A stretch of DNA of 63,754 nt, filler included, from Ministeria vibrans ATCC 50519 (lineage: Eukaryota; Protista; Filasterea): assembly GCA_943704425.1 (NCBI GenBank). It is 14 parts of 14 records of this genome, joined end to end, with 100 filler letters (N's around TTAATTAATTAA, not from the genome) between each part and the next. Parts side by side here need not be neighbours in the genome. Positions count along the whole stretch, not along the records: positions 35,286 to 46,906 come from CALSCP010001933.1; 13 more parts are not named here. One strand, 5' to 3'. Within the stretch, counting starts at the first letter, position 1. Each line of letters opens with the position of its first letter. A program made the position numbers and the translations under genes. Below the pieces are notes generated by a model. That model had not been told where the DNA came from. It saw nothing but the letters and a program-made list of their open reading frames with translations, and ran no database searches. Below, piece after piece: positions 35,286 through 47,039 of this stretch.

Positions 35286-35361
<76 letters not shown>

Positions 35362-35380
35362 GCGGACGGCAGACACGTAC

Positions 35381-36366
35381 AATCAATGGACTAGTGTAGG
35401 CAATGGAGCACGTTCCGCCGTTGGCGCACGGAGACGACACACAGCCATCGATGATGTCACACGTCTCGCCAACGACACCATATGCTATGGAAGGGGGGTG
35501 GGAAGAACGAGAAAAAAGAGTTGATTTTTGTTTGTTGTGTTTTTTTAGGGAGGTCCAAGTACAACAGTATTGTTCTTACGGCACGAGCAGTTGAAGGAAC
35601 TGGCGAGGTCGGTACAGGTGGCGCCGTTTTGGCAAGGCGAAGAAAGACAGTAAATGGGAAACTCACAAAAGGTGCCACTGAAACCAACGGGACACGCGCA
35701 ACCCGTCGAGCTGTCTGGGGATGAGCCTGAGCCGAAACACGTCGCGCCGTTTTGACAAGGAGACGAGGCACACAAAGGTTCCTCACTGCAAAACAGCCCA
35801 GCCCAGCCTCCGGCGCACAAGCAGGACCCTGTCGTCTGGGCAACTGTCACGTTGATGGTGTCGGACAAGGGCGCACAGGCGTCGAGGACGACGGCAGACG
35901 AGAAGGAGACAGTGAGCGAGAGGGTTCCCTGCGACGAGACGGCTGTTGACGCTTCACTTGCACTCATCGCCACCGACGCAACTGAGCTCGCACACGACTC
36001 GCCGCCTTCGTCAAAGAGAGTGCGTGAAAAGCTGGCTCCTGCTGTGAGGTCCACGTAAGCGAGCGGGCCGCCAATGTCGGCCACCACCGCAACGCTTATG
36101 GTCAGTGCTTCTGCGGTGGGAACGTTTTGAAAAACCAGCGTAGCAGAGCTCGCGCCGACCGAAGCCTCGTGCGAGACGTAACCATTGAGGCACGTTGCGC
36201 CGTTTAGGCATGGCGAATTGTCGCAATATTGTGCACTTGTGGGTTTCTAAATCGGAACTCTGTCAATTTTTTTCTTTTTTTCTTTTTTTTTTTCTCTGTC
36301 TACCAAAAAAATGACGAGAAAAGCTCCCAGAAGAAGGCACACGCTCGAATGAGCCGTTGGGCTCAT
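35381..36366 (-). CDS. Secreted EGF-repeat protein whose first EGF is split by a 122-aa insert; 3'-truncated
   Basis: Exon 1 36366-36304 signal peptide MSPTAHSSVCLLLGAFLVIFL; exon 2 36246-35580 KPTSAQYCDNSPCLNGATC-[insert]-CLCAGGWAGLFC plus 2 EGFs; exon 3 YGVVGETCDIIDGCVSSPCANGGTC. Confidence 0.88.
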
Positions 36367-36618
36367 ATTCGACACTAAACAAAGAAAAGAAAAAAAAAAG
36401 AAGTGAACTGATAAGAATAAAGAATAAAAAGATTAAAGAACCGCAAATAAACAAAAGAAACAGTACCACAAAAGTCTACCAAGAAACTACCATTCAGAAA
36501 ATAGTCAAATCTACAACGCACTTGCCACATTTGATGGGTTCTCCTTCATGACGTATTGATGTCGTGTCGTACCGCGTACGTGCACGCTCTCATCTTGCTT
36601 GTCTTCCCTGCCACGGCG

Positions 36619-36868
36619 ATTGATCGATGAGTGATCCGAGTTAGAGTGATTGATTGATCGAAGAGTTATCCGAGAGAGAGTTTGAGTGAGTGATTGATCG
36701 AAGGGTGATCCAAGAGAGAGTTAGAGTGAGTGATTGATCGAAGAGTTATCCGAGAGAGAGTTAGAGCGAGTGATTGATCGAAGAGTGATCCGAGTTAGAG
36801 TGATTGATTGATCGAAGAGTTATCCGAGAGAGAGTTGGAGTGAGTGATTGATCGAAGAGTGAGCGATT
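36619..36868. repeat. Intergenic minisatellite, 34-40-bp units (gattgatcgaagagt[t/g]atccgag...gagtgagt) x~6.5
   Basis: Direct reading; no unique spacers. Confidence 0.9.
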
Positions 36869-37124
36869 TATTTGAATAGGACGATTAAGCGCGCGCAGTC
36901 TTCTTTTCTCCCCTTATAAGACTAGATGTGGATTGCGCCACACCACGCTATGTATTAAATAACGTATACTACGTGTGGCCGATTGTAAGTGAATAAACAG
37001 TGGAAGAAAAATTGAAGAAGAAGATGTTCCAAATAATTATTGATGACTAATAAATTTATTATTATTATTTTTACTGGAGGACATGATCATAGACTGAAAC
37101 TCTCGCTGAGACTTCAGTATGTTT

Positions 37125-37959
37125 TCATTGCACACAGGCGCCCAGAGACACCTTGTCGTTAGCTTGTGAGACGATTCGCATTGACGTGGCGTCCTTGTCG
37201 CGCACCAACAACCATTGTTGATCTTGCGTTTTCCACGGAAAGTCGTGACACTCGTACAGCAGTGGCGTGGTGCCCACCGAAGGCGATGCGTCGCCCGCAT
37301 CAAGACACAGTTTTCCACACTGAAACTGACCGGAGACCACGTTGAATGCAAAGCGCTGTTCCCCACTCTTCTGTGCACAGTCGGCCAGTGCCAACGAGGG
37401 CGCTGCGGTGTTGGCGTTTGACACGCCCGTGAGACAGAGCGACGAGCCGAGCAGTTGGAGCTGCGACGACTCGGCGAGCATTTGCCAGCGCACGACCATC
37501 TTCTCGTCGGGCGTGTCCACCGGGTACATGGTGAGCACATGGTTGTCGGCTGGGGTGCACAGGGGATATTTGGGTGGGCCACGCGGATCGTCGTTCATGG
37601 GTGTAACATCGCCCGTCTGCACATACCAGCGCAGCAACTGCCGCATTAGATCCGTCTGCAACCCCGAATGTACTCCATCGTCCATCAGATTGTTCAACTC
37701 TCGCGGATCTGCGTGTAAATCGTACAGCTCGCTCTGACCCCGCGGTCTATAGACAAGCTTGTGTGTCGCATTGCGTAGCATGACGGCGCGTGGTGAGCCG
37801 TCCGGATAGTGTTGCATCTCCTCTTTGAATCGCGGGTAGTACATTCCTTTTGGGTTCTCCACAATGCTATGCTGCGATGGGTCATTGGGCTCCATTTCAT
37901 TTGAGTAAAAGCTATAAAGGAGCAAGACGGGAGAAAGGAGTACTGTGAGAGAAAAAATC

Positions 37960-37996
<37 letters not shown>

Positions 37997-40640
37997 CATA
38001 CAAGCCTCCTTCGCTGTAAACAGTGTTATTCGGGTAGGGATGTCCAATGCGATTAAACAGGCGCTCTTTAAAGCTGGTTGCAAACTGGACATGGTTGATG
38101 GTCACGTTGGCAAGGTCAAGTATGGTCGCAAAGGCTAAAGCAATTGCGGAGAGAGAGCAAACAAACAATCAGACATGCGCGGGAAAATTAGAGTGACTGA
38201 CCATCGAATGTGTTGACGGGGGAATCAATACGCTGGGTGGGAGTGCCACCGGGTGTGCGCACTATGAGAGGCACACGTGTCAGCATATCGTCAAGACCAC
38301 CCGGCCACTTCTCAACGAGATGCGCATCGCCCGCAAAGTCGCCTGGAGAGAGAGAGAATAGAGAGGACGGAGAAAGAAACAAAGTGGTAGAAACAGACAG
38401 TGAGAAGCGGACAGTAATAGACAGGCAGTAAGAGACAGAGAAAGACAGAGAAAGACAGAGAGAGACAGAGAGAGACAGAGAAAGACAGAGAAAGAAGAAA
38501 AAAAGAGAGTATGTGTGTGACAGAGAGAACCACACTTGAACAGAGCATATAAAGTGAGAGAAAGTTTTAATAATAATATAGTGAGAAATAATAAGCTACA
38601 CAGAGACCTACCGTGATCGGATGAAACAAGAACTGTAGTCCGATCAGCCAATGCCAACGAATCTATTCCGTTCAAGAGCTCTCCAAAGATCCAATCAGAA
38701 TAAGTAACTCGTCCAAGATAAACACTACAAATATTAATGATGAAGGTTGTTATTCTCTGTTCGAAAATTATTATGAGTACCTGTTGAGCTTGTAAAAGAA
38801 ATCTTCATTGAGAGGATTTAAGTTACGCCAGTGTGGAATACCATCAACGGTACTGTAATAATCGGGCTGGGCAGCGCAATGGGATCCGTATGAGTAGGTG
38901 TGAGATTAACAGTGTGCAAGTGAGATATATGAAAGACGGTGGCATTGCGTGAAAAACAGCGAGTTTGAGTGACGTTGCGCATGAATGACAGTGTGTGAGT
39001 GGCAATGACAGTGAGTAATAGTGAGTGTGAGAATGAATAATTAAGTGTGCTTCTCACTTTGTTTGGGAGTCCGACGGGTCGCAATGGCGATTTCTGTTTG
39101 ATTTGCTGGGGATCATACATTTCATGGTACTCCTTAGGTGCTCCATCTAACCGCAAACGCACGCACACAATACACAGAGACACAAAGATCACAGGGGGAG
39201 AGAGACAGAGAATACACAGTCAGAGTGAAGAGAGATGCGATGGGGTAATGGCCGTACATGGCGGATGTGCCCCCATCCCTGGAATCCAAATCAGAAACGG
39301 CTCGGGGGGAGAGTTTTGCATGAAATTGAGCTAATAGAGAAGAAAAACAACAATACGTAATTAATTTCAGGGTCGCTCTGAAAAGGTGATTCAAAGCGTA
39401 CGGCGTGGATAACTGCAGAGTAATCTCCATTCTTAGTGCTGTTTGGGGCGACGCCGCTGGGATGATCCATGAATGAGTAGTAGCCTACGCCACGCTCGCA
39501 CAGTCATCTCCTTCCTTCTCCTCTCCCCTCCGCTCTCCCTCTCTCTTCGTACCCGAAGTGTTGAACGCATAGGCGTTTCCGCCGTTCGACACCCCAATTT
39601 CGTTGTACCATTCACTCACACTGAGTGGCATTGAGTCTGCGCTCAGCATATCGTTCTTCCCGAGCCACAGAATATGCTGCAGAAGCGCCATTCAGAAGAT
39701 CTCTTCCTTTCCTCTGACTCTTCTTACGTATCCTTCGTCTTTGAGACGACGAAAAAAGTTATCTTCATAGCTCCGCACTAAATGAGTCTGAATAGCCGAG
39801 TGTTATTTTGAGAGTGTTTGTTTGTATCACTCTCAAACTCTCTCTCAAACTGAAACCTAATTAACCCCTCAATCTCAAACTGTCTCTCAAACTCTCTCAA
39901 TCTCAATCTCTCTCTCTCAAACTCTCTCTCAAACTCTCTCTCAAACTCTCTCTCAAACTCTCTCTCGAACTCTCTCTCTCAAACTCTGTTTCAAACTCTC
40001 CATGCCTACCTGAGTCCGATGTCCCAGCACATGCATGTAGCGTCCAGTAATGAGGGCGCATCGGCTGGGCGAACATTGGGTGTGCAGTACGTGTGCGGAA
40101 GTGAAGAGGGTGCCTTCCTTTGCGAAGCGATCGTAGCTGGAAGGGGAGAGAGAGACGGAGGGTATGACACGCTGCCGACTGATACACTGCCGACAGACCA
40201 GCTTGGGGCGAAGTAAGGCGCAACAAGAACGTCAACAAACAACAAACAAGCGAAGTTATGGACACAATTCAACCCATTTCAAACGGATGCCGCTCGCTTC
40301 CACTCTCTATCGTGAAACTGTACGTGAGCCTTACAGTGACTGGTGCAATGGACAGTCAAGAAGAGTCCCCGAGTGCGTTTGTCGACACAAAACGCACATT
40401 ATCACATTCAAACACTCAAAAAGTGTCCCTCTTGACGTGTTTCTCTCATCCACCCCCGGCATACTTTGGCGTCTTGGCTATCGGATGTCCATATACACCA
40501 AGAGACTCAGCGCGCGTTTCGTCTGGGAAGTAAAAGACAAAATTTGGCCGAGTGTCATTTGCGGCTCGCCTGATCCCATGCAAGGGCCGCCCCGCAACGA
40601 CTCCACTTGCAACGGCAATGGCGAAGAATACCATCAACAT
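37125..40640 (-). CDS. Secreted Cys-type sulfatase (bacterial-like family) with C-terminal ricin-B lectin domain, multi-exon
   Basis: PNFVFYFPDETRAESLGVYGHP, TQCSPSRCALITGRY, WLGKND, SSDHG|DFAGD, SELYDLHADPRELNNL; then LCLT...LADC...QRF, LCLDAG...LYECH...QQW (beta-trefoil). Confidence 0.92.
39830..40000. repeat. Intronic 12-bp repeat (tctctctcaaac)n
   Basis: Direct reading. Confidence 0.85.
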
Positions 40641-41238
40641 GGCGATCAAAATAATAATAATTATTATTAGGAATAAATGAAGTCGAAAAGATTATTATTA
40701 ATGATTGTTCATAAATCGGTTTTCTGTTTCAGTTTAATAATAACTATCAGCATTAATAAATGGGTTGTATTCTTCTTCTTCATAACTATCAGCTTCTTCT
40801 TCTCAAACCAAACCGAATATTCGTTTCCATTGCTCTTGCTCGCGCTGGCAAACGCAGTGACGTCTGTTGTATGACACAGTCAGGCAGTAACGACGTCTCC
40901 ATCTTGTGACAGGAAACGCAAAGTGGGCGGAGATTCGACAGAGATCGCATCACAGGAGGTTTAACAGCGTTTGGTGTATTCGAAGTGTATTCACGGTGTA
41001 TTTTAGACATGTCTTTGTTTCGATTAGAATGCGAGAAAAATTGGTGGATACTGAATCAACAAGAGCTATTTGTGGCGGATCATCCTAAAATTGATTAAGA
41101 GCGAGTGTTGAAAGAGACTAATTATTGCAGTAATTGAGATGGTCTGAATCAAAAACGAAAAACAAAAACAACAACATAATAATAATAATAATAATACAAA
41201 AGCAAACTACTCCGTATCCTAGGGGTAGATAAGCTAAA

Positions 41239-42834
41239 TTAAAGCAATATTTTTGCAATGAAGATTTCGGACACGGTTGATTGACGGGTGCGAAACAGGT
41301 TGCCGCCAGTGGTGCCAGCGACAAGTAGCGTTGAGCCAAACTTGGCAACGGCCTGACCAGCGTCGCTCTCGTTGGTGCCAATGAGGCGACTCGACGTGAT
41401 ACTGCCCGCTGCATCGTAGTAAACCAGCACGGCATCGGTGCTACCGCCAAGATAAGCGTGATTCAGGATGGTCCCTTCCGTATACCCAAATGCGATGGAT
41501 GTATCATCACCGTAGCTAACACCGCTGTGCAACCGACTTCCCGCAGAGCCAATTGTCTCGGTACGCCAGCGGAACGCACCCGTTGTCTTGTCGTACTGCG
41601 TCGCAAACAAATTCGTTGTTGGGTTTCGCTCTGTGAATCCGGCACACGTGACATAATTGTCGGAGGTCGAAACACCTCTGTTCATGTAGCTATTGATTCC
41701 CGCCTCCATCTGAGTGAATAGTCGCGTCTTCGCCGTGGTATACTTCATCAGGAGCACGTCATAGCCACCAACATGCGGCTCTCCATCGAGACCAAGGTCG
41801 GCGTAGCCTGCGACGTAGACTCCGGTCGAGTCGGTCACCACAGCGTTCAATCGCTCATGGCCGCCACTATTACCACGCTGCATGGTCCACTCGTGCGTGC
41901 CGTTTGAATCGAATTTTAGAATGAAGAGATCGCGATAGCCCTGGTGACTGCTTGACAGAGGCATTACACCGCGTGATGCACCAACAACAAACACCTCTTC
42001 GGCCGCGTTCACTGCAATGCCATCAACATCATCTTCACTCGAGGTTCTTGGGTTCGAACTTGAAGCCGTGTTAGGGCCGACCGAACCAAGCTGTCGAGCC
42101 CAGACAATTGTTCCGTCGCTTGTTGTCACCTTCATAACAACCGCATCATTGAGACCCGCATTAGAAGTGTTTGCAGGAATAAAAGATCCGGACGTCTGCC
42201 CGCATACGTAGGCGTGTTTGCCATCGTCGGCAACAGCAATGCCGGTGAAAGTCGTGACGCCAGAATCAGTCATGTTATATTCGCGTTTCCACTCGACAGC
42301 ACCGTTTTTGCTTATTTTCGTTATGGCCGGCACGGCCCACGACTCTCTGTATGCAACAAAAACTGCTCCGTTCATATCCAAGTCCATCGCATTTGGAGAT
42401 AGACTCTGACCGTTTGCAGGATCGGAAGTCAACTGCAGAGTCCAGATGTAATCGCCTGGGACAAGAGCACTCTCGCAGCTGGAACCAGTCCACGAATCCG
42501 GACAGTCGCAATGAAAACCTCCAACCGCACTAGTCGAAGAACAGCTTCCACCGTTCTGGCACGGGCTGGAAGAGCACAAACCACACGCACACGCCTCAAG
42601 AGCAAGAGACGCCGCCATTATGCGAGTCTCAATCTCATCGAATTGCAGCTGCATTTCAGCGTTGGTAAGCGCCTTCTCCCCCTTGATGTAAATATCACCA
42701 GTGGACAGGACTGACCCATTGACGAGTGGCATTAAGACCAAGTTGCCATCGTCATTCACAATCTCCGCATACTGCGCTTGAACCGACGTCAACGCAAGGA
42801 AGAATGTCACAATATACAACTCCTGTCGCATCAT
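41239..42834 (-). CDS. Secreted intronless protein: cubilin-N-like segment + coiled coil + EGF + SBBP-type beta-propeller
   Basis: Signal peptide; DDGNLVL...GDIYIKG; helical segment; CSSSPCQNGGSC...CDCPDSWTGSSC; repeats such as DLFILKFDSNGTHEWTMQRG, DVLLMKYTTAKTRLFT, GIAVNAAEEVFVVGAS. Confidence 0.85.
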   Translation of the reverse strand: MMRQELYIVTFFLALTSVQAQYAEIVNDDGNLVLMPLVNGSVLSTGDIYIKGEKALTNAEMQLQFDEIETRIMAASLALEACACGLCSSSPCQNGGSCSSTSAVGGFHCDCPDSWTGSSCESALVPGDYIWTLQLTSDPANGQSLSPNAMDLDMNGAVFVAYRESWAVPAITKISKNGAVEWKREYNMTDSGVTTFTGIAVADDGKHAYVCGQTSGSFIPANTSNAGLNDAVVMKVTTSDGTIVWARQLGSVGPNTASSSNPRTSSEDDVDGIAVNAAEEVFVVGASRGVMPLSSSHQGYRDLFILKFDSNGTHEWTMQRGNSGGHERLNAVVTDSTGVYVAGYADLGLDGEPHVGGYDVLLMKYTTAKTRLFTQMEAGINSYMNRGVSTSDNYVTCAGFTERNPTTNLFATQYDKTTGAFRWRTETIGSAGSRLHSGVSYGDDTSIAFGYTEGTILNHAYLGGSTDAVLVYYDAAGSITSSRLIGTNESDAGQAVAKFGSTLLVAGTTGGNLFRTRQSTVSEIFIAKILL

Positions 42835-43866
42835 GTGTTCTGGGGGCTGGGTGTGGAAATTAGAATATGAAGATTAGACTTATACGACGGAGAAAATTAA
42901 ATTATATTAACGGAAAGTCGGAAACAATCAGGAAAATAATATCCCCCTCCCCCTGGCCGCGCAGCTGCTCGGCCCCTATGACATAATTTATCCGGCCGGA
43001 ATTTCCCATGGTTTTTTGTTTCAAAAAGCAAAAAAGGGACAAAAAAGAACCCTATCGCCTGCAAAGTCGCCCCCGCACGACCACACAAACCAGAAATGCA
43101 TGAATATCATCAGGCATGCGCCAATGAAGGCATGACACGAAAGATAGCAAGCTTTCCCACGTTCAATCGTCAGGCGAGAAATTCGCGAGCAATACGTTCG
43201 CGTAACGTTCTAACTACGTTCTCCCTACGTTCCGCCTACGTTTCCCTTCTCGGACAGGAAATGCGCCCATATGCTTGCGGGTGAACTCTTTCACTCGCTT
43301 TGATTCCTCACTTGCGTCCAACTCAAGCATCACCTTCCGCTTGGCAATTTATGAAACAAGTCCGAAGAGAGCACAAACTAAATCGTCCGAGCGGCCCCAA
43401 ACGCCCTCAACCCCTCTCAACAATAACCTCACAACACATGGTTGCTTACTGTTGTTTGCTGGTGTTCAGAGAGTGCAGAAATCCTCAGGCAAGAGCGAGA
43501 AAAACGAAAATCTGTGATTTTTCACAAGTAGGGAGTATCTGATTTCGGAAAATTGAAATAATACCAAACAGGAGACGAAAGTTGTAGGTACCCTTAAAAT
43601 ATTACTGTTTATTATTAGTGGTTTCTAAGTAAAGCAAAACTGAAACCGTCAACCCGATCATATTTTATTTTTATTTCTTATGCAACCGCAAAACGAGACC
43701 GTCAGCCAGAGCAGCTCCAAACCACCACTAACCCTCCTTATAGCAGCGCCTGAAGAAAGAGAATTAGAGAGAGAACACAAAACGGATTGGCAATCGACAA
43801 AGCGAGACGGAGAGAAAAGAACAACCGCCGCTAAAAAAAAATTACAACAAACCCATCTTCAACTTT

Positions 43867-46653
43867 TTACACTTTCTTCTTCTCGAACCAACTTCGAATG
43901 TCCCCCACCCCGTGTGCCCATTGCTCTCGCTCGCGCTGTCGAACTCGGTCACGCAGCAACGCTGTCTCCGTCTCGTGACAGGGAACACAAAGTGTGCGGA
44001 GATTCGATAGATCACATTCACCTCCTCCCTCACTCACAGGAAGAATCTATGGAATGTATACAATAAAATAGTGCTTTCAGTGTCAAACATCTATGCAAAA
44101 AAAAAATATATTATCGCACGTACGTGATCCGCCTGCCAAAACTGACCCGCTGTTGGTTCGGTCACAATACGCTCCTGTTGCTTGGTCGTGAGACGCGCAA
44201 AGGAGGTCTGTTGCAGAGCAACGCGCCGTGCTGAGTGCGACAGCGAACACACACGCTCACAGAGTGCGTGCGCATCCAACCCACACACACGACAGATGCC
44301 TCGCTCAAGCGTGAACAGCTGCTTACGAATTGCCGACGAGCTTGTGCGCAAACGTGTTGCCTGACGACACTCGTGAGAGCAGTAGAGCACACCGGAAGGG
44401 ACCATGACCCGACCACAAGCGCGACAAGTACCCTCCTCTGTTGAGGCACCCACCGTCGTCCGCGTTTGCGTGACGGAATACCGCTCAAACGACGCCACAT
44501 GTTCACTGTGGGTGCGTTCACGCAGCGCCTCGACAGCCCTCGCAAGCGACTCACACGTATACCGTTCCGTACCCTTCGCCATCAATCCCAGACGCTCCAC
44601 CGCAGTCAGTTTGCGCCATGCACGCACAAACCGCACATCAGCGGGGAGTCTAGCCTCCTCCACCTTACACACACGCACAGCAGATGACAACGACACATTG
44701 TCGTCGGCCGCAGTCAAAAACACGTGCAACAAGTCCGTGTGTGCACTCACATAATAATACGCTTCTTCTTCTTCTTCTTCCTCTTCCTCTTCCTCTTCTT
44801 CAATCACAATCACTTCAGTCTCCTCTATCCGTCTGCGCTTCTTCTCCTTCTCTACCTTTACGCTTTTCTTCGCCGACTTGCACATTGCACATCGTAGCAC
44901 AGCACTCGCATTGGCGAACGTACACACACTACACTCCCACTCGCTCAATGACACATCATCAACCCGCCGCTTCGTCAAGAACGACCGCACATCGGGTGTC
45001 CCGCATGCAACTGGCAAGTTGCGCGGTGGTACCACATCCGCACCGGCGTGTGTTCCAGCCACACGCAAAGCCTCCTCTGAGGCAGCCCACAGTCGACACT
45101 CACGAAATATTCCCCGTGTACTCGCTTCCCCTTCGCCCTCGTGCTCCTTCTCCCTATCTGCCTCCGTCTCTTTCTCGTCAACCGCCAATCTCCCCTTTGT
45201 CTGATCCAGAATGGTGCCTACCACACGCAGTTTGCGATCGAGCAAAGGCCACAGAATCTCATCAAGTGTGCCCTCGGCCACAAGAAAGTGCACATTGACC
45301 GAGGCGTGCTGGCCAATGCGATGCGCGCGGTCCTCCGCCTGAACCAACACCGAGGGAGTCCAGTGCAACTCTCCAAACACAACCTGGTCGGCGGCCGTCA
45401 GCGTGATCCCTTGACCACACGCAAGCAGCGACAGTACTGCCACACGCACACCACTCGAGGGCGACTGGAAACGTCGCACAAGCTCGTGTCGTTCGGTGGC
45501 AGGCGTGCCACCGTGAATGAGAATCGCCGACTGACTGTCGCGCAACAGCGCCGTGTGCACGGCCTCAAGCACCCCACGGTGGTGCGCAAACACAAGAAAC
45601 TTCGTCGTGGGCGCACTGTTTCGCACTGCATCCAGCACGTAGGCGGCCGCCGCGACACTCTTGTGCTCGCCAGTGCGTTGGTAGCACTTTGAGAACGCCT
45701 GAAAGACTCGGCCGTACTCGTCACTGCCCTTTAGCACCTCGCGCAGTCGCTTCATTTCGTCGCGCATCGTCGCGTCTGAAGCGGCGCTGGTGCCTTCAAG
45801 ACGCACCCGCTGCCGTCGTTTCGCCGGCAACTCCGTCAGCACGTCCGCCTTGCGTCGACGCACCATAAGCGGCGTAAGACGTGTGTGCAACTCATCGAGA
45901 TGGCTGGCACCACGCGTGTCCCAGCCAAATCGACCGCGATGGGCGTTGCAGTAGCGCTTAGCAAATTCATTGAATGTGCCAAAGACGCCCGGATGAAGCG
46001 CATCCAGTTGTACATAGAGCTCTTCGGGGCGCGAGAGTGCGGGCGTGCCTGAGAGCAGCAAAAGACGACGCGCCGACTGCAGGAGCGGAAGGAGCGCCGC
46101 CGTGCGCTTCGCCTTGCGATTCTTCAAGTAGTGCGACTCGTCCACAATGACAGTGGGGAAAGCACGGGCGCACAAGCGTGCGTTCATGGCTGGCATACTG
46201 GCGAGAGCGTACGACACTATCACCAGACGGGCATTGGCCAGCGGTACGACGTCTGTGCCCGACCGTACCACGTGCACCTGTGCCGGTAGTAGGTTGAGCC
46301 AGCGATAGGCCTCGTCGGCCCACTGGTAGCGCACTGAGCTAAGAGAGAGAGAGAGAGAGAGAGTGTGTGTGTGTGTGTGTCACAACACACACAATCCTCA
46401 TTGTACATCGTTACCTTGGCACCACCACAAGGACAGGCCAGTCGTGCGCGTACATCTTGGCCGTGACAAGAGCCTGCACGGTCTTGCCCAGGCCCATGTC
46501 GTCGGCAAGAAGACAGCGGCCGCCCATGGCGACAATGCGCTTGATTCCGTCCAGCTGGAAGGGCAGCAGCGGAAGCGACAGAATCGCCGCCATGTCCGCC
46601 ACGCCCCTCTCGTCTTCGGGCGGTCTAGTGTGTGTCGAAGCGTGCGCCATCAT
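43867..46653 (-). CDS. ZRANB3: ZRANB3 annealing helicase/endonuclease (SNF2 ATPase, PIP-like box, NZF, HNH, APIM-like tail)
   Basis: LADDMGLGKT, DESH, LSGTPALSRP, QAEDRAHRIGQ, DVRSFL, WECSVCTFAN...CAMC, WQADH|ILPVSEGGGECDLSNLRTLCVPCH, GDIRSWFEKKKV*. Confidence 0.95.
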
Positions 46654-47039
46654 GGTGGCAGGAGGAAGAGGCGAAAGAGAAGAATAGAGTTAAAACTTAA
46701 ATCTGAAATTCTGAATCACCAATTCGATTTATCGTAAGCTGAACTCAATAATAAATATTATTATTATTATAATAATTGGACAAAAATAAGATTATATTAT
46801 TACAAGTCGATGGACGTGAAGGAGCCCTCAGGCACTGACGCAGACGCATCATGATTTGAATTGAGATGGAGGGTGTCGCTGAAGTGAGCATGCCGGACGG
46901 CAGTAGNNNNNNNNNNNNNNNNNNNNNNNNNNNNNNNNNNNNNNNNNNNNTTAATTAATTAANNNNNNNNNNNNNNNNNNNNNNNNNNNNNNNNNNNNNN
47001 NNNNNNGGGGGGGGGCGAGAGAGAGACAGACAGACAAAC

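What the first reader, a model, noticed from the sequence alone, without database searches (positions are those of the whole stretch)
35824..36189. Second split-EGF gene: the same inserted domain placed at the mature N-terminus of a secreted protein
Seen: signal peptide, then QYCDNSPCLNGATC-[122 aa]-CLCAGGWAGLFC. Manual alignment with copy 1 gives ADIGG/GDLDG, YVDLTAG/YVALTAG, LFDEGGE-SC/VFDTGNEIQC, TLSLT/SLTFT, SSAV..DAC/SALV..LVC, with both insert cysteines conserved. Overall divergence is high, implying an old duplication under structural constraint. The fourth EGF (CANGGTCSIAYTSPLI, then an intron at ~35381) also shows no nearby Cys4 and may carry another insert. Inference: two hits in 64 kb of arbitrary contigs suggest a genome-wide expanded family, perhaps for prey or substrate recognition.
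Basis: partly seen in the sequence, partly recalled or inferred. Interest (0 to 1): 0.8.

Follow-up and report, generated by a model that had tools for sequence, protein, structure and literature searches.

The report
Beta-sandwich domain nested inside an EGF
A secreted protein of an unidentified protist starts with an EGF module whose third-to-fourth-cysteine loop carries a 122-residue folded domain with no database family, much as laminin carries its L4 domain inside a laminin-type EGF.

Summary
On the minus strand, a signal-peptide exon (36366..36304) is followed by an exon (36246..35580) that reads QYCDNSPCLNGATC, then 122 aa (35824..36189), then CLCAGGWAGLFC. Two ordinary EGFs follow, and a fourth is cut by an intron and the piece edge.

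The two flanks match complementary halves of one EGF profile. The insert has coding composition, unlike the AT-rich introns here.

A full HMMER scan of 1.84 billion representatives found one true relative. It is a 1.35-kb eukaryotic metagenome scaffold (L001) carrying the same domain twice, each time between Cys3 and Cys4 of an EGF inside an EGF array.
- Insert-only alignment scores z=10.5 against shuffles.
- Both insert cysteines are conserved.

Pfam, NCBIfam and PDB sequence searches give nothing for the insert. AlphaFold models of both copies (pLDDT about 62) agree on eight strands and one helix. Fold searches return a flat list of jelly-roll sandwiches, including CBM35/36/15 and PNGase F.

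The closest known arrangement is laminin L4, a CBM35-like sandwich between Cys3 and Cys4 of an LE module. I read this as a real orphan domain nested in a canonical EGF, probably a laterally displayed binding module. Genome-wide expansion and a prey-recognition role are untested.

The parts
36304..36366 (-). Exon 1: start codon and signal peptide (21 aa, hydrophobic core VCLLLGAFLVIFL). The predicted cleavage site, after TSA, falls in exon 2.
   Evidence: ATG at 36366-36364, donor GTAGAC at 36303, phase 0.
36247..36303 (-). Intron 1 (57 nt, GC 0.26, GTAGAC...TTTAG).
36190..36225 (-). EGF1 N-terminal half, Cys1-Cys3 (CDNSPCLNGATC).
   Evidence: Matches Pfam EGF positions 1-15 and local EGF HMM positions 1-14. 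Notch1 EGF aligns to the two halves as two pieces.
35824..36189 (-). Nested 122-aa domain (the finding): predicted 8-strand jelly-roll-like beta-sandwich with one short helix and two conserved cysteines (35992-35994, 35875-35877).
35788..35823 (-). EGF1 C-terminal half, Cys4-Cys6 (CLCAGGWAGLFC).
   Evidence: Matches local EGF HMM positions 20-34, and Pfam EGF_DL_JAG 11-24 and EGF_Teneurin 13-30.
35665..35772 (-). EGF2, canonical six-cysteine EGF.
   Evidence: Pfam EGF, best stretch exon-2 residues 159-191, E=2e-11 for the exon. Local HMM 41.8 bits.
35580..35649 (-). EGF3, first part (Cys1-Cys5). It continues in exon 3 after a phase-1 intron.
35485..35579 (-). Intron 2 (95 nt, GC 0.39, GTAAGA...CCATAG).
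35459..35484 (-). Exon 3, first part: end of EGF3 (PYGVVGETC).
35381..35443 (-). EGF4 N-terminal half (CVSSPCANGGTCSIAYTSPLI), followed by donor GTACGT at 35380. The rest of the gene lies beyond the piece edge.
   Evidence: Pfam EGF positions 1-12, E=0.034.

Best explanation
The 366 bases encode a real, folded, roughly 120-aa extracellular domain of a family not yet described. It is nested in the Cys3-Cys4 loop of a canonical six-cysteine EGF module, the first module of a secreted or surface EGF-array protein of an unplaced eukaryote.

Inferred mechanism: the EGF still closes through its usual disulfides (1-3, 2-4, 5-6), so the 2-4 bond clamps the base of the insert. The insert is a jelly-roll-type beta-sandwich with its own disulfide, and its two ends lie side by side. 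It therefore projects sideways from the EGF rod without breaking the array, as laminin L4 and LF do in LE arrays.

Its most likely role is a displayed ligand-binding (glycan or protein) module. That role rests only on fold class and analogy and has no direct evidence.

Shown: the gene model, the split EGF, protein-level conservation of the insert and of its host position, and the lack of any sequence family. Inferred: the fold, the disulfide pattern and the function.
For: - Gene model and exact coordinates.
- The flanks are complementary halves of one EGF. The N-half matches Pfam EGF 1-15, and the C-half matches EGF_DL_JAG 11-24 and EGF_Teneurin 13-30. A local HMM built from canonical EGFs of the window piece and L001 gives positions 1-14 and 20-34, and the same split appears in L001a. 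A single Notch1 EGF aligns as two pieces.
- The insert looks coding. Its GC is 0.61 against 0.26 and 0.39 for the two introns, and the codon score is best in the reading frame.
- The only true relative among 1.84 billion representatives is P0005, with a single 37-bit stretch covering query residues 5-148. BLASTP gives 28% identity over 151 aa, pairwise E=3e-11.
- Its scaffold L001 has two split EGFs inside an EGF array with calcium-binding-type linkers and short AT-rich introns.
- Insert-only Smith-Waterman against 2000 shuffles gives z=10.5 (0/2000), z=4.5 (2/2000) and z=5.8 (0/2000).
- The first insert cysteine is invariant in all three copies. The second is conserved in the two complete copies.
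- AlphaFold models of the two copies, built from the same three-sequence alignment with a different target sequence, give the same order of 8 strands and 1 helix. Core pLDDT is 65-86 and pTM 0.57-0.59.
- Both models retrieve the same jelly-roll sandwiches at Z 7-9, including CBM35, CBM36, CBM15, PNGase F, BcsB and the GH115 C-terminal domain.
Against: - The EGF halves have pLDDT below 50 in both models, so closure of the EGF around the insert is not shown structurally.
- The library-wide E-value of the sole relative is only 4.4e-4.
- The fold-search lists are flat: Z is about 7 even at rank 50, with no family standing out. This supports a fold class and nothing more specific.
- There is no transcript evidence that the insert stays in the mature mRNA.
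- The gene is cut off at the piece edge.
- The insert is rich in Ser, Thr and Ala (44%) and has almost no Lys or Arg, which could inflate similarity scores. The shuffle controls do keep composition.
Confidence: 0.75

Rival explanations
1. The insert is an unrecognised or alternatively spliced in-frame intron ('exitron'). Removing it would leave an ordinary short-loop EGF.
For: An in-frame GTTACG...ACAG pair exists inside the insert. Splicing there would give CLNGSCLC, a tenascin/teneurin-type Cys3-Cys4 spacing (read). Pfam EGF_Teneurin matches the C-half. An open 122-codon frame arises in about 3% of shuffles.
Against: - GC is 0.61 against 0.26-0.39 for the real introns, and the codon score is best in frame.
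- The candidate donor has T at +3, where all four observed donors (three here, one in L001) have A. The candidate acceptor lacks a pyrimidine or AT-rich tract.
- Decisive: the stretch is conserved at protein level with two copies in L001, z=10.5, with conserved cysteines.
- Occasional alternative splicing is not excluded.
Confidence: 0.04
2. The two flanks are degenerate EGF remnants that do not fold together. The protein simply has a short Cys-knot motif, an independent domain, and then a half-EGF.
For: The AlphaFold models give no confident EGF around the insert (pLDDT below 50). Each half alone scores weakly.
Against: - The halves cover complementary, non-overlapping profile positions in the window and in L001a, and the cut-off L001b copy shows the same N-terminal half.
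- The cysteine count is exactly 3+3 around the insert.
- In L001 the split units sit in register within a regular EGF array with normal 5-7 residue linkers.
- The same arrangement is experimentally established for laminin LE/L4.
Confidence: 0.12
3. The insert is a flexible, glycosylated Ser/Thr/Ala-rich spacer rather than a folded domain, like the interrupted N-terminal EGF-like module of fibulin-3.
For: Ser+Thr+Ala make up 44% of the insert, and it has one Lys/Arg. Overall pLDDT is only about 62. [quoted passage not shown]
Against: - Alternating hydrophobic strand patterns are conserved between copies at 26-38% identity, with invariant N, P, V, D, G, F, T, F and C positions.
- The two models agree on 8 strands, with core pLDDT 65-86.
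- There is a conserved cysteine pair.
- Length is conserved (122 against 128 aa).
Confidence: 0.08

Closest known systems
Laminin L4 (domain IV, Pfam Laminin_B) nested in a laminin-type EGF-like (LE) module
   Same: [quoted passage not shown] L4 is described as CBM35-like (PMC5338690). CBM35 modules are among the tied fold matches of both models here (2w46 Z 7.8, 3zm8 Z 7.7-7.8).
   Different: - The host here is a canonical six-cysteine EGF, whereas the laminin host is an eight-cysteine LE.
- From general knowledge, L4 is larger than this 122-aa insert.
- There was no Pfam Laminin_B hit even at E up to 10.
- No laminin chain appears in the top 50 structural matches.
- The organism is a non-animal-like eukaryote of unknown placement, and no other laminin domain is seen in the exons read.
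Laminin LF domain (beta chains), inserted between LE5 and LE6
   Same: It is a CBM35-like sandwich that interrupts an EGF-like array without breaking the packing of the array.
   Different: LF follows a truncated LE and is not nested inside a Cys3-Cys4 loop. It has an extra helical region and about 220 residues.
Bacterial carbohydrate-binding modules of the jelly-roll type (CBM35, CBM36, CBM15, CBM6-like) and the PNGase F N-terminal domain
   Same: The predicted fold class and size match. Z is 7-9 with 97-116 aligned residues at 2.9-3.4 A for both copies.
   Different: There is no sequence similarity (7-15% identity in the alignments). No family stands above the rest. Sugar-binding residues cannot be assessed. 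None of these modules is nested in an EGF.
Interrupted N-terminal EGF-like module of fibulin-3 (short fibulins)
   Same: It is an EGF-like module at the N-terminus of a secreted EGF-array protein that is interrupted by extra sequence (PMC7563619).
   Different: To my knowledge, and not tested here, the fibulin interruption is a linker and not a conserved folded domain. There is no sequence relation.

Membership tests
EGF-like domain (Pfam PF00008), host module | Six cysteines with the motifs C-x3-P-C-x-N-G-x-x-C and C-x-C-x2-G-[FWY]-x-G-x2-C. | tested here: met
   CDNSPCLNGATC and CLCAGGWAGLFC read directly. Pfam EGF 1-15 matches the N-half. EGF_DL_JAG and EGF_Teneurin match the C-half. The local HMM covers 1-14 and 20-34.
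EGF-like domain (Pfam PF00008), host module | Short Cys3-Cys4 loop (9-13 residues in the canonical EGFs of this gene, its neighbour gene and L001). | tested here: not met
   The loop is 122 residues here, and 128 in L001a. This is the feature of interest.
EGF-like domain (Pfam PF00008), host module | Disulfides 1-3, 2-4 and 5-6 forming one compact module. | not testable with these tools
   pLDDT is below 50 for both halves in both models, and no coordinates were available.
Laminin L4 / Laminin_B (PF00052) nested in LE | Insertion between Cys3 and Cys4 of an EGF-like module. | tested here: met
   for the window, for L001. The definition comes from PMC5338690.
Laminin L4 / Laminin_B (PF00052) nested in LE | The host is an eight-cysteine laminin-type LE module. 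| tested here: not met
   The host has six cysteines, and the next EGF starts five residues after Cys6. There were no Laminin_EGF hits.
Laminin L4 / Laminin_B (PF00052) nested in LE | Sequence match to the Laminin_B profile. | tested here: not met
   No hit at E up to 10 for any of the three copies, and none among PDB sequences with the profile.
Laminin L4 / Laminin_B (PF00052) nested in LE | CBM35-like beta-sandwich fold. | tested here: inconclusive
   CBM35 modules are tied with many other jelly rolls at Z 6.8-7.8. No laminin chain is in the top 50. The models are of moderate confidence.
Jelly-roll carbohydrate-binding modules (CBM35/36/15/6) | Sequence membership or conserved sugar/calcium-binding residues. 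| tested here: not met
   There were no Pfam or NCBIfam hits. Identity in the structural alignments is 8-15%.
Fibronectin type III | A colinear match to one seven-strand FN3 domain. | tested here: not met
   Hits to fish PTPRH/J are sums of 6-15 stretches of 2-12 bits each. Each stretch straddles FN3 repeat boundaries. There is no Pfam fn3 hit, and the models have 8 strands with jelly-roll matches.

The most novel reading that the evidence does not exclude
The insert defines a previously undescribed extracellular domain family of protists that has been nested repeatedly in the Cys3-Cys4 loop of canonical EGF modules. It is either a very distant relative of the laminin L4/LF (CBM35-like) inserts or an independent reinvention of the same design. 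In the first case, the 'sandwich inside an EGF-like module' arrangement of basement-membrane proteins would have roots outside animals. In the second, the Cys3-Cys4 loop would be a generally permissive site for domain grafting in EGF arrays.
Probability: 0.2. Interest if true: 0.7.

Novelty: new variant of a known kind. Interest (0 to 1): 0.5.

Why it matters
Folded domains nested inside EGF-like modules are best known from laminin-type LE modules (laminin L4). This case uses the same Cys3-Cys4 loop in a plain six-cysteine EGF. The guest domain has no Pfam, NCBIfam or PDB sequence relative, and only one relative turned up among 1.84 billion representative proteins. It adds an orphan extracellular domain family and a second, independent example of this nesting geometry, in a microbial eukaryote. 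If the fold and disulfide pattern are confirmed, it tells protein engineers and matrix biologists that the EGF Cys3-Cys4 loop tolerates a 120-130 aa domain. It also gives a small, tractable model for asking what the still enigmatic laminin L4/LF inserts do.

Tried and rejected
- Retained-intron reading: rejected on composition, codon score, weak splice sites and protein-level conservation.
- FN3 relationship suggested by phmmer hits P0001 and P0004 (fish receptor tyrosine phosphatase eta), and hits P0002 and P0003: rejected. Their E-values come from summing many 2-12 bit repeat matches.
- Word-index protein search with the single sequence found nothing. With the three-copy profile it found only P0005.
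- Two metagenome-contig scans and one viral-contig scan with the profile found no confirmed relative.
- ESM Atlas gave no usable hit for either copy.
- NCBIfam and PDB sequence searches gave nothing for the insert.
- tblastn of the three inserts against the rest of the piece found no further copy.
- An exact look-up of the neighbouring 531-aa protein, meant to extend the contig, found nothing on record.
- Paper searches for the L001 sample identifiers found nothing. A first 'split EGF' text search was swamped by split-EGFP papers.
- The joined spliced protein (exons 1+2+3) was deliberately not submitted to any tool. All searches were made exon by exon, by reference.

Full report
**Observation.** The piece (35286..46906) is eukaryotic DNA with microsatellites and short AT-rich introns. 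On the minus strand I derive the following gene model.
- Exon 1, 36366..36304, encodes MSPTAHSSVCLLLGAFLVIFL.
- Intron 1 runs GTAGAC...TTTAG (57 nt).
- Exon 2, 36246..35580, starts KPTSAQYCDNSPCLNGATC.
- Intron 2 runs GTAAGA...CCATAG (95 nt, phase 1).
- Exon 3, 35484..35381, ends at the donor GTACGT (35380). After that come dinucleotide repeats and the piece edge.

In exon 2 the cysteines lie at residues 8, 13, 19 | 85, 124 | 142, 144, 153, followed by two regular EGFs. Residues 20-141 are 122 aa and map exactly to 35824..36189.

**Is it one EGF that is split?**
- Pfam sees only EGF-type matches in exon 2 and nothing in the insert.
- On the 149-aa split unit, Pfam EGF positions 1-15 match the N-flank and EGF_DL_JAG 11-22 the C-flank.
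- I built a small HMM from the canonical EGFs present in the window piece and in L001. It places the N-flank on model positions 1-14 and the C-flank on positions 20-34.
- A single Notch1 EGF chain aligns to the query in two pieces, chain residues 5-18 and 24-36.
- The flanks are thus complementary halves of one module, with 3+3 cysteines, and EGF2 starts five residues after Cys6.

**Is the insert coding?**
- Its GC is 0.61, against 0.26 and 0.39 for the two introns.
- A codon log-odds score trained on neighbouring Pfam-supported ORFs is best in the reading frame: +0.16 bits per codon, against -0.04 and -0.15 in the other two frames.
- An in-frame GTTACG...ACAG pair exists and would yield a tenascin-like CLNGSCLC if spliced. 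The sites are poor compared with the four real introns seen. The conservation described next argues against an intron.

**Relatives.**
- The word-index search found nothing. Because the claim rests on the presence or absence of relatives, I ran the full HMMER scan of 1.84 billion representatives.
- Five proteins reached E<=1e-3. Four are repeat proteins, including fish PTPRH/J fibronectin arrays. Their scores are sums of many 2-12 bit stretches, so I reject them.
- The fifth, P0005 (221 aa), matches in one 37-bit stretch covering query residues 5-148. BLASTP gives 28% identity over 151 residues with pairwise E=3e-11.
- P0005 is encoded on L001, a 1354-bp ENA metagenome scaffold (ERZ23497376, scaffold_11652).
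- Reading L001 shows a eukaryotic EGF array with short AT-rich introns and calcium-binding-type linkers. Two EGFs in it are split after Cys3:
  - CHPQSPCLNNGNC-[128 aa]-CACDPRYVGLTC, which is complete;
  - CVSSPCSNGATC-[79 aa...], which is cut by the scaffold end.
- The three copies align with invariant N, P, V, D, G, F, T, F and C positions.
- Insert-only Smith-Waterman scores against 2000 composition-preserving shuffles are:
  - window against L001a: z=10.5 (0/2000);
  - window against L001b: z=4.5 (2/2000);
  - L001a against L001b: z=5.8 (0/2000).
- The first insert cysteine is conserved in all three copies, and the second in both complete copies.
- A profile search of the word-indexed 5.8-billion set, two metagenome-contig scans, a viral-contig scan and the ESM Atlas added no further member. 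No second copy lies in this piece.
- The family is real but very rare in public data.

**Fold.**
- No Pfam, NCBIfam or PDB sequence relative exists for the insert.
- AlphaFold2 on the three-sequence alignment gave the following models.

| Copy | mean pLDDT | pTM |
|---|---|---|
| window | 63 | 0.59 |
| L001a | 62 | 0.57 |

- Both models show the same order of eight strands, with one short helix after the sixth strand. The core is at pLDDT 65-86 and the EGF halves are below 50.
- Foldseek gave only weak sandwich matches: MAM, CBMs, GOLD, Cry domain III (TM <= 0.44).
- The Foldseek-independent aligner returned, for both models, the same flat list of jelly-roll sandwiches at Z 7-9. It includes PNGase F, BDI_1231, the BcsB carbohydrate-binding domain, the GH115 C-terminal domain, seipin, CBM35, CBM36, CBM15, and TNF/C1q heads.
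- I take this as support for a jelly-roll-class beta-sandwich, not for any one family.
- From general knowledge of the jelly-roll fold, its first and last strands are neighbours. That is what a domain grafted into a loop needs.

**Comparison with what is known.**
[quoted passage not shown] They also state that L4 and LF share a CBM35-like sandwich, and that the LE array continues undisturbed around the insert (PMC5338690).
- The present case uses the same loop and a similar fold class. It differs in three ways:
  - the host is a six-cysteine EGF;
  - the guest is smaller;
  - the guest shows no detectable sequence relation to Laminin_B.
- Fibulin-3 has an interrupted N-terminal EGF-like module (PMC7563619). 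As far as I know the interruption there is a linker.
- I therefore file the finding as a new variant of a known kind, and not as a member of the L4 family.

**Mechanism and function.**
- Shown: a signal-peptide protein whose mature N-terminus is a split EGF carrying a conserved cysteine-containing domain, followed by further EGFs.
- Inferred: the EGF closes with its usual disulfides, so Cys2-Cys4 clamps the insert. The insert has its own disulfide and projects from the rod as a binding module.
- The neighbouring genes do not inform function. They are a sulfatase with a ricin-B lectin domain, a secreted EGF plus SBBP-propeller protein, and a ZRANB3-like helicase.

**Organism.** The organism is unplaced. 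The ZRANB3-like ORF is at most about 50% identical to any database protein, with Salpingoeca rosetta best among the named hits.

**Fourth EGF.** Its Cys3 is followed by SIAYTSPLI and a phase-0 intron. This faintly resembles the first residues of the L001 inserts, but it cannot be resolved without more sequence.

**Limits.**
- There is no transcript evidence and no coordinates, and only one related scaffold.
- The gene is truncated by the piece edge.
- The joined spliced protein was not submitted to any tool. Searches were made exon by exon, by reference.

Noticed in passing
window 40792-41010 (-): A short ORF carries an HNH-endonuclease C-terminal motif (Pfam HNH E=0.0019). It is 65% identical over 26 aa to the HNH exon of the ZRANB3-like gene at 43870-44037 (-), about 3 kb away, with another gene in between. 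It may be a duplicated fragment or pseudo-exon.
   Followed up: partly
window 41239-42834 (-): An apparently intronless 531-aa secreted protein has one canonical EGF followed by SBBP-type beta-propeller repeats. No exactly matching gene product is on record in the public collection.
   Followed up: partly
window 43867-46653 (-): A multi-exon ZRANB3-like gene carries SNF2, helicase C, RanBP2 zinc-finger and HNH domains. It is at most about 50% identical to any database protein, with Salpingoeca rosetta best among named hits, so the source organism has no close sequenced relative in the protein set.
   Followed up: partly
window 37125-40649 (-): Sulfatase-like exons (SGSH_C match) end in a ricin-B lectin domain. 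The introns are filled with (GA)n and 10-30 bp purine-rich tandem repeats.
   Followed up: no
window 36638-36860: A 40-bp tandem repeat (5.7 copies, 85% matches) lies in the region upstream of the split-EGF gene.
   Followed up: no
L001:1081-1353 (+): The metagenome scaffold carries a second split EGF that is cut by the scaffold end. Several nested copies can therefore occur within one EGF array.
   Followed up: yes
window 36175-36180 and 35828-35834 (-): An in-frame GTTACG...ACAG pair sits inside the insert. If used as splice sites it would restore a short-loop tenascin-type EGF (CLNGSCLC). The sites look weak and the pair is probably chance, but RNA-seq could check it.
   Followed up: partly
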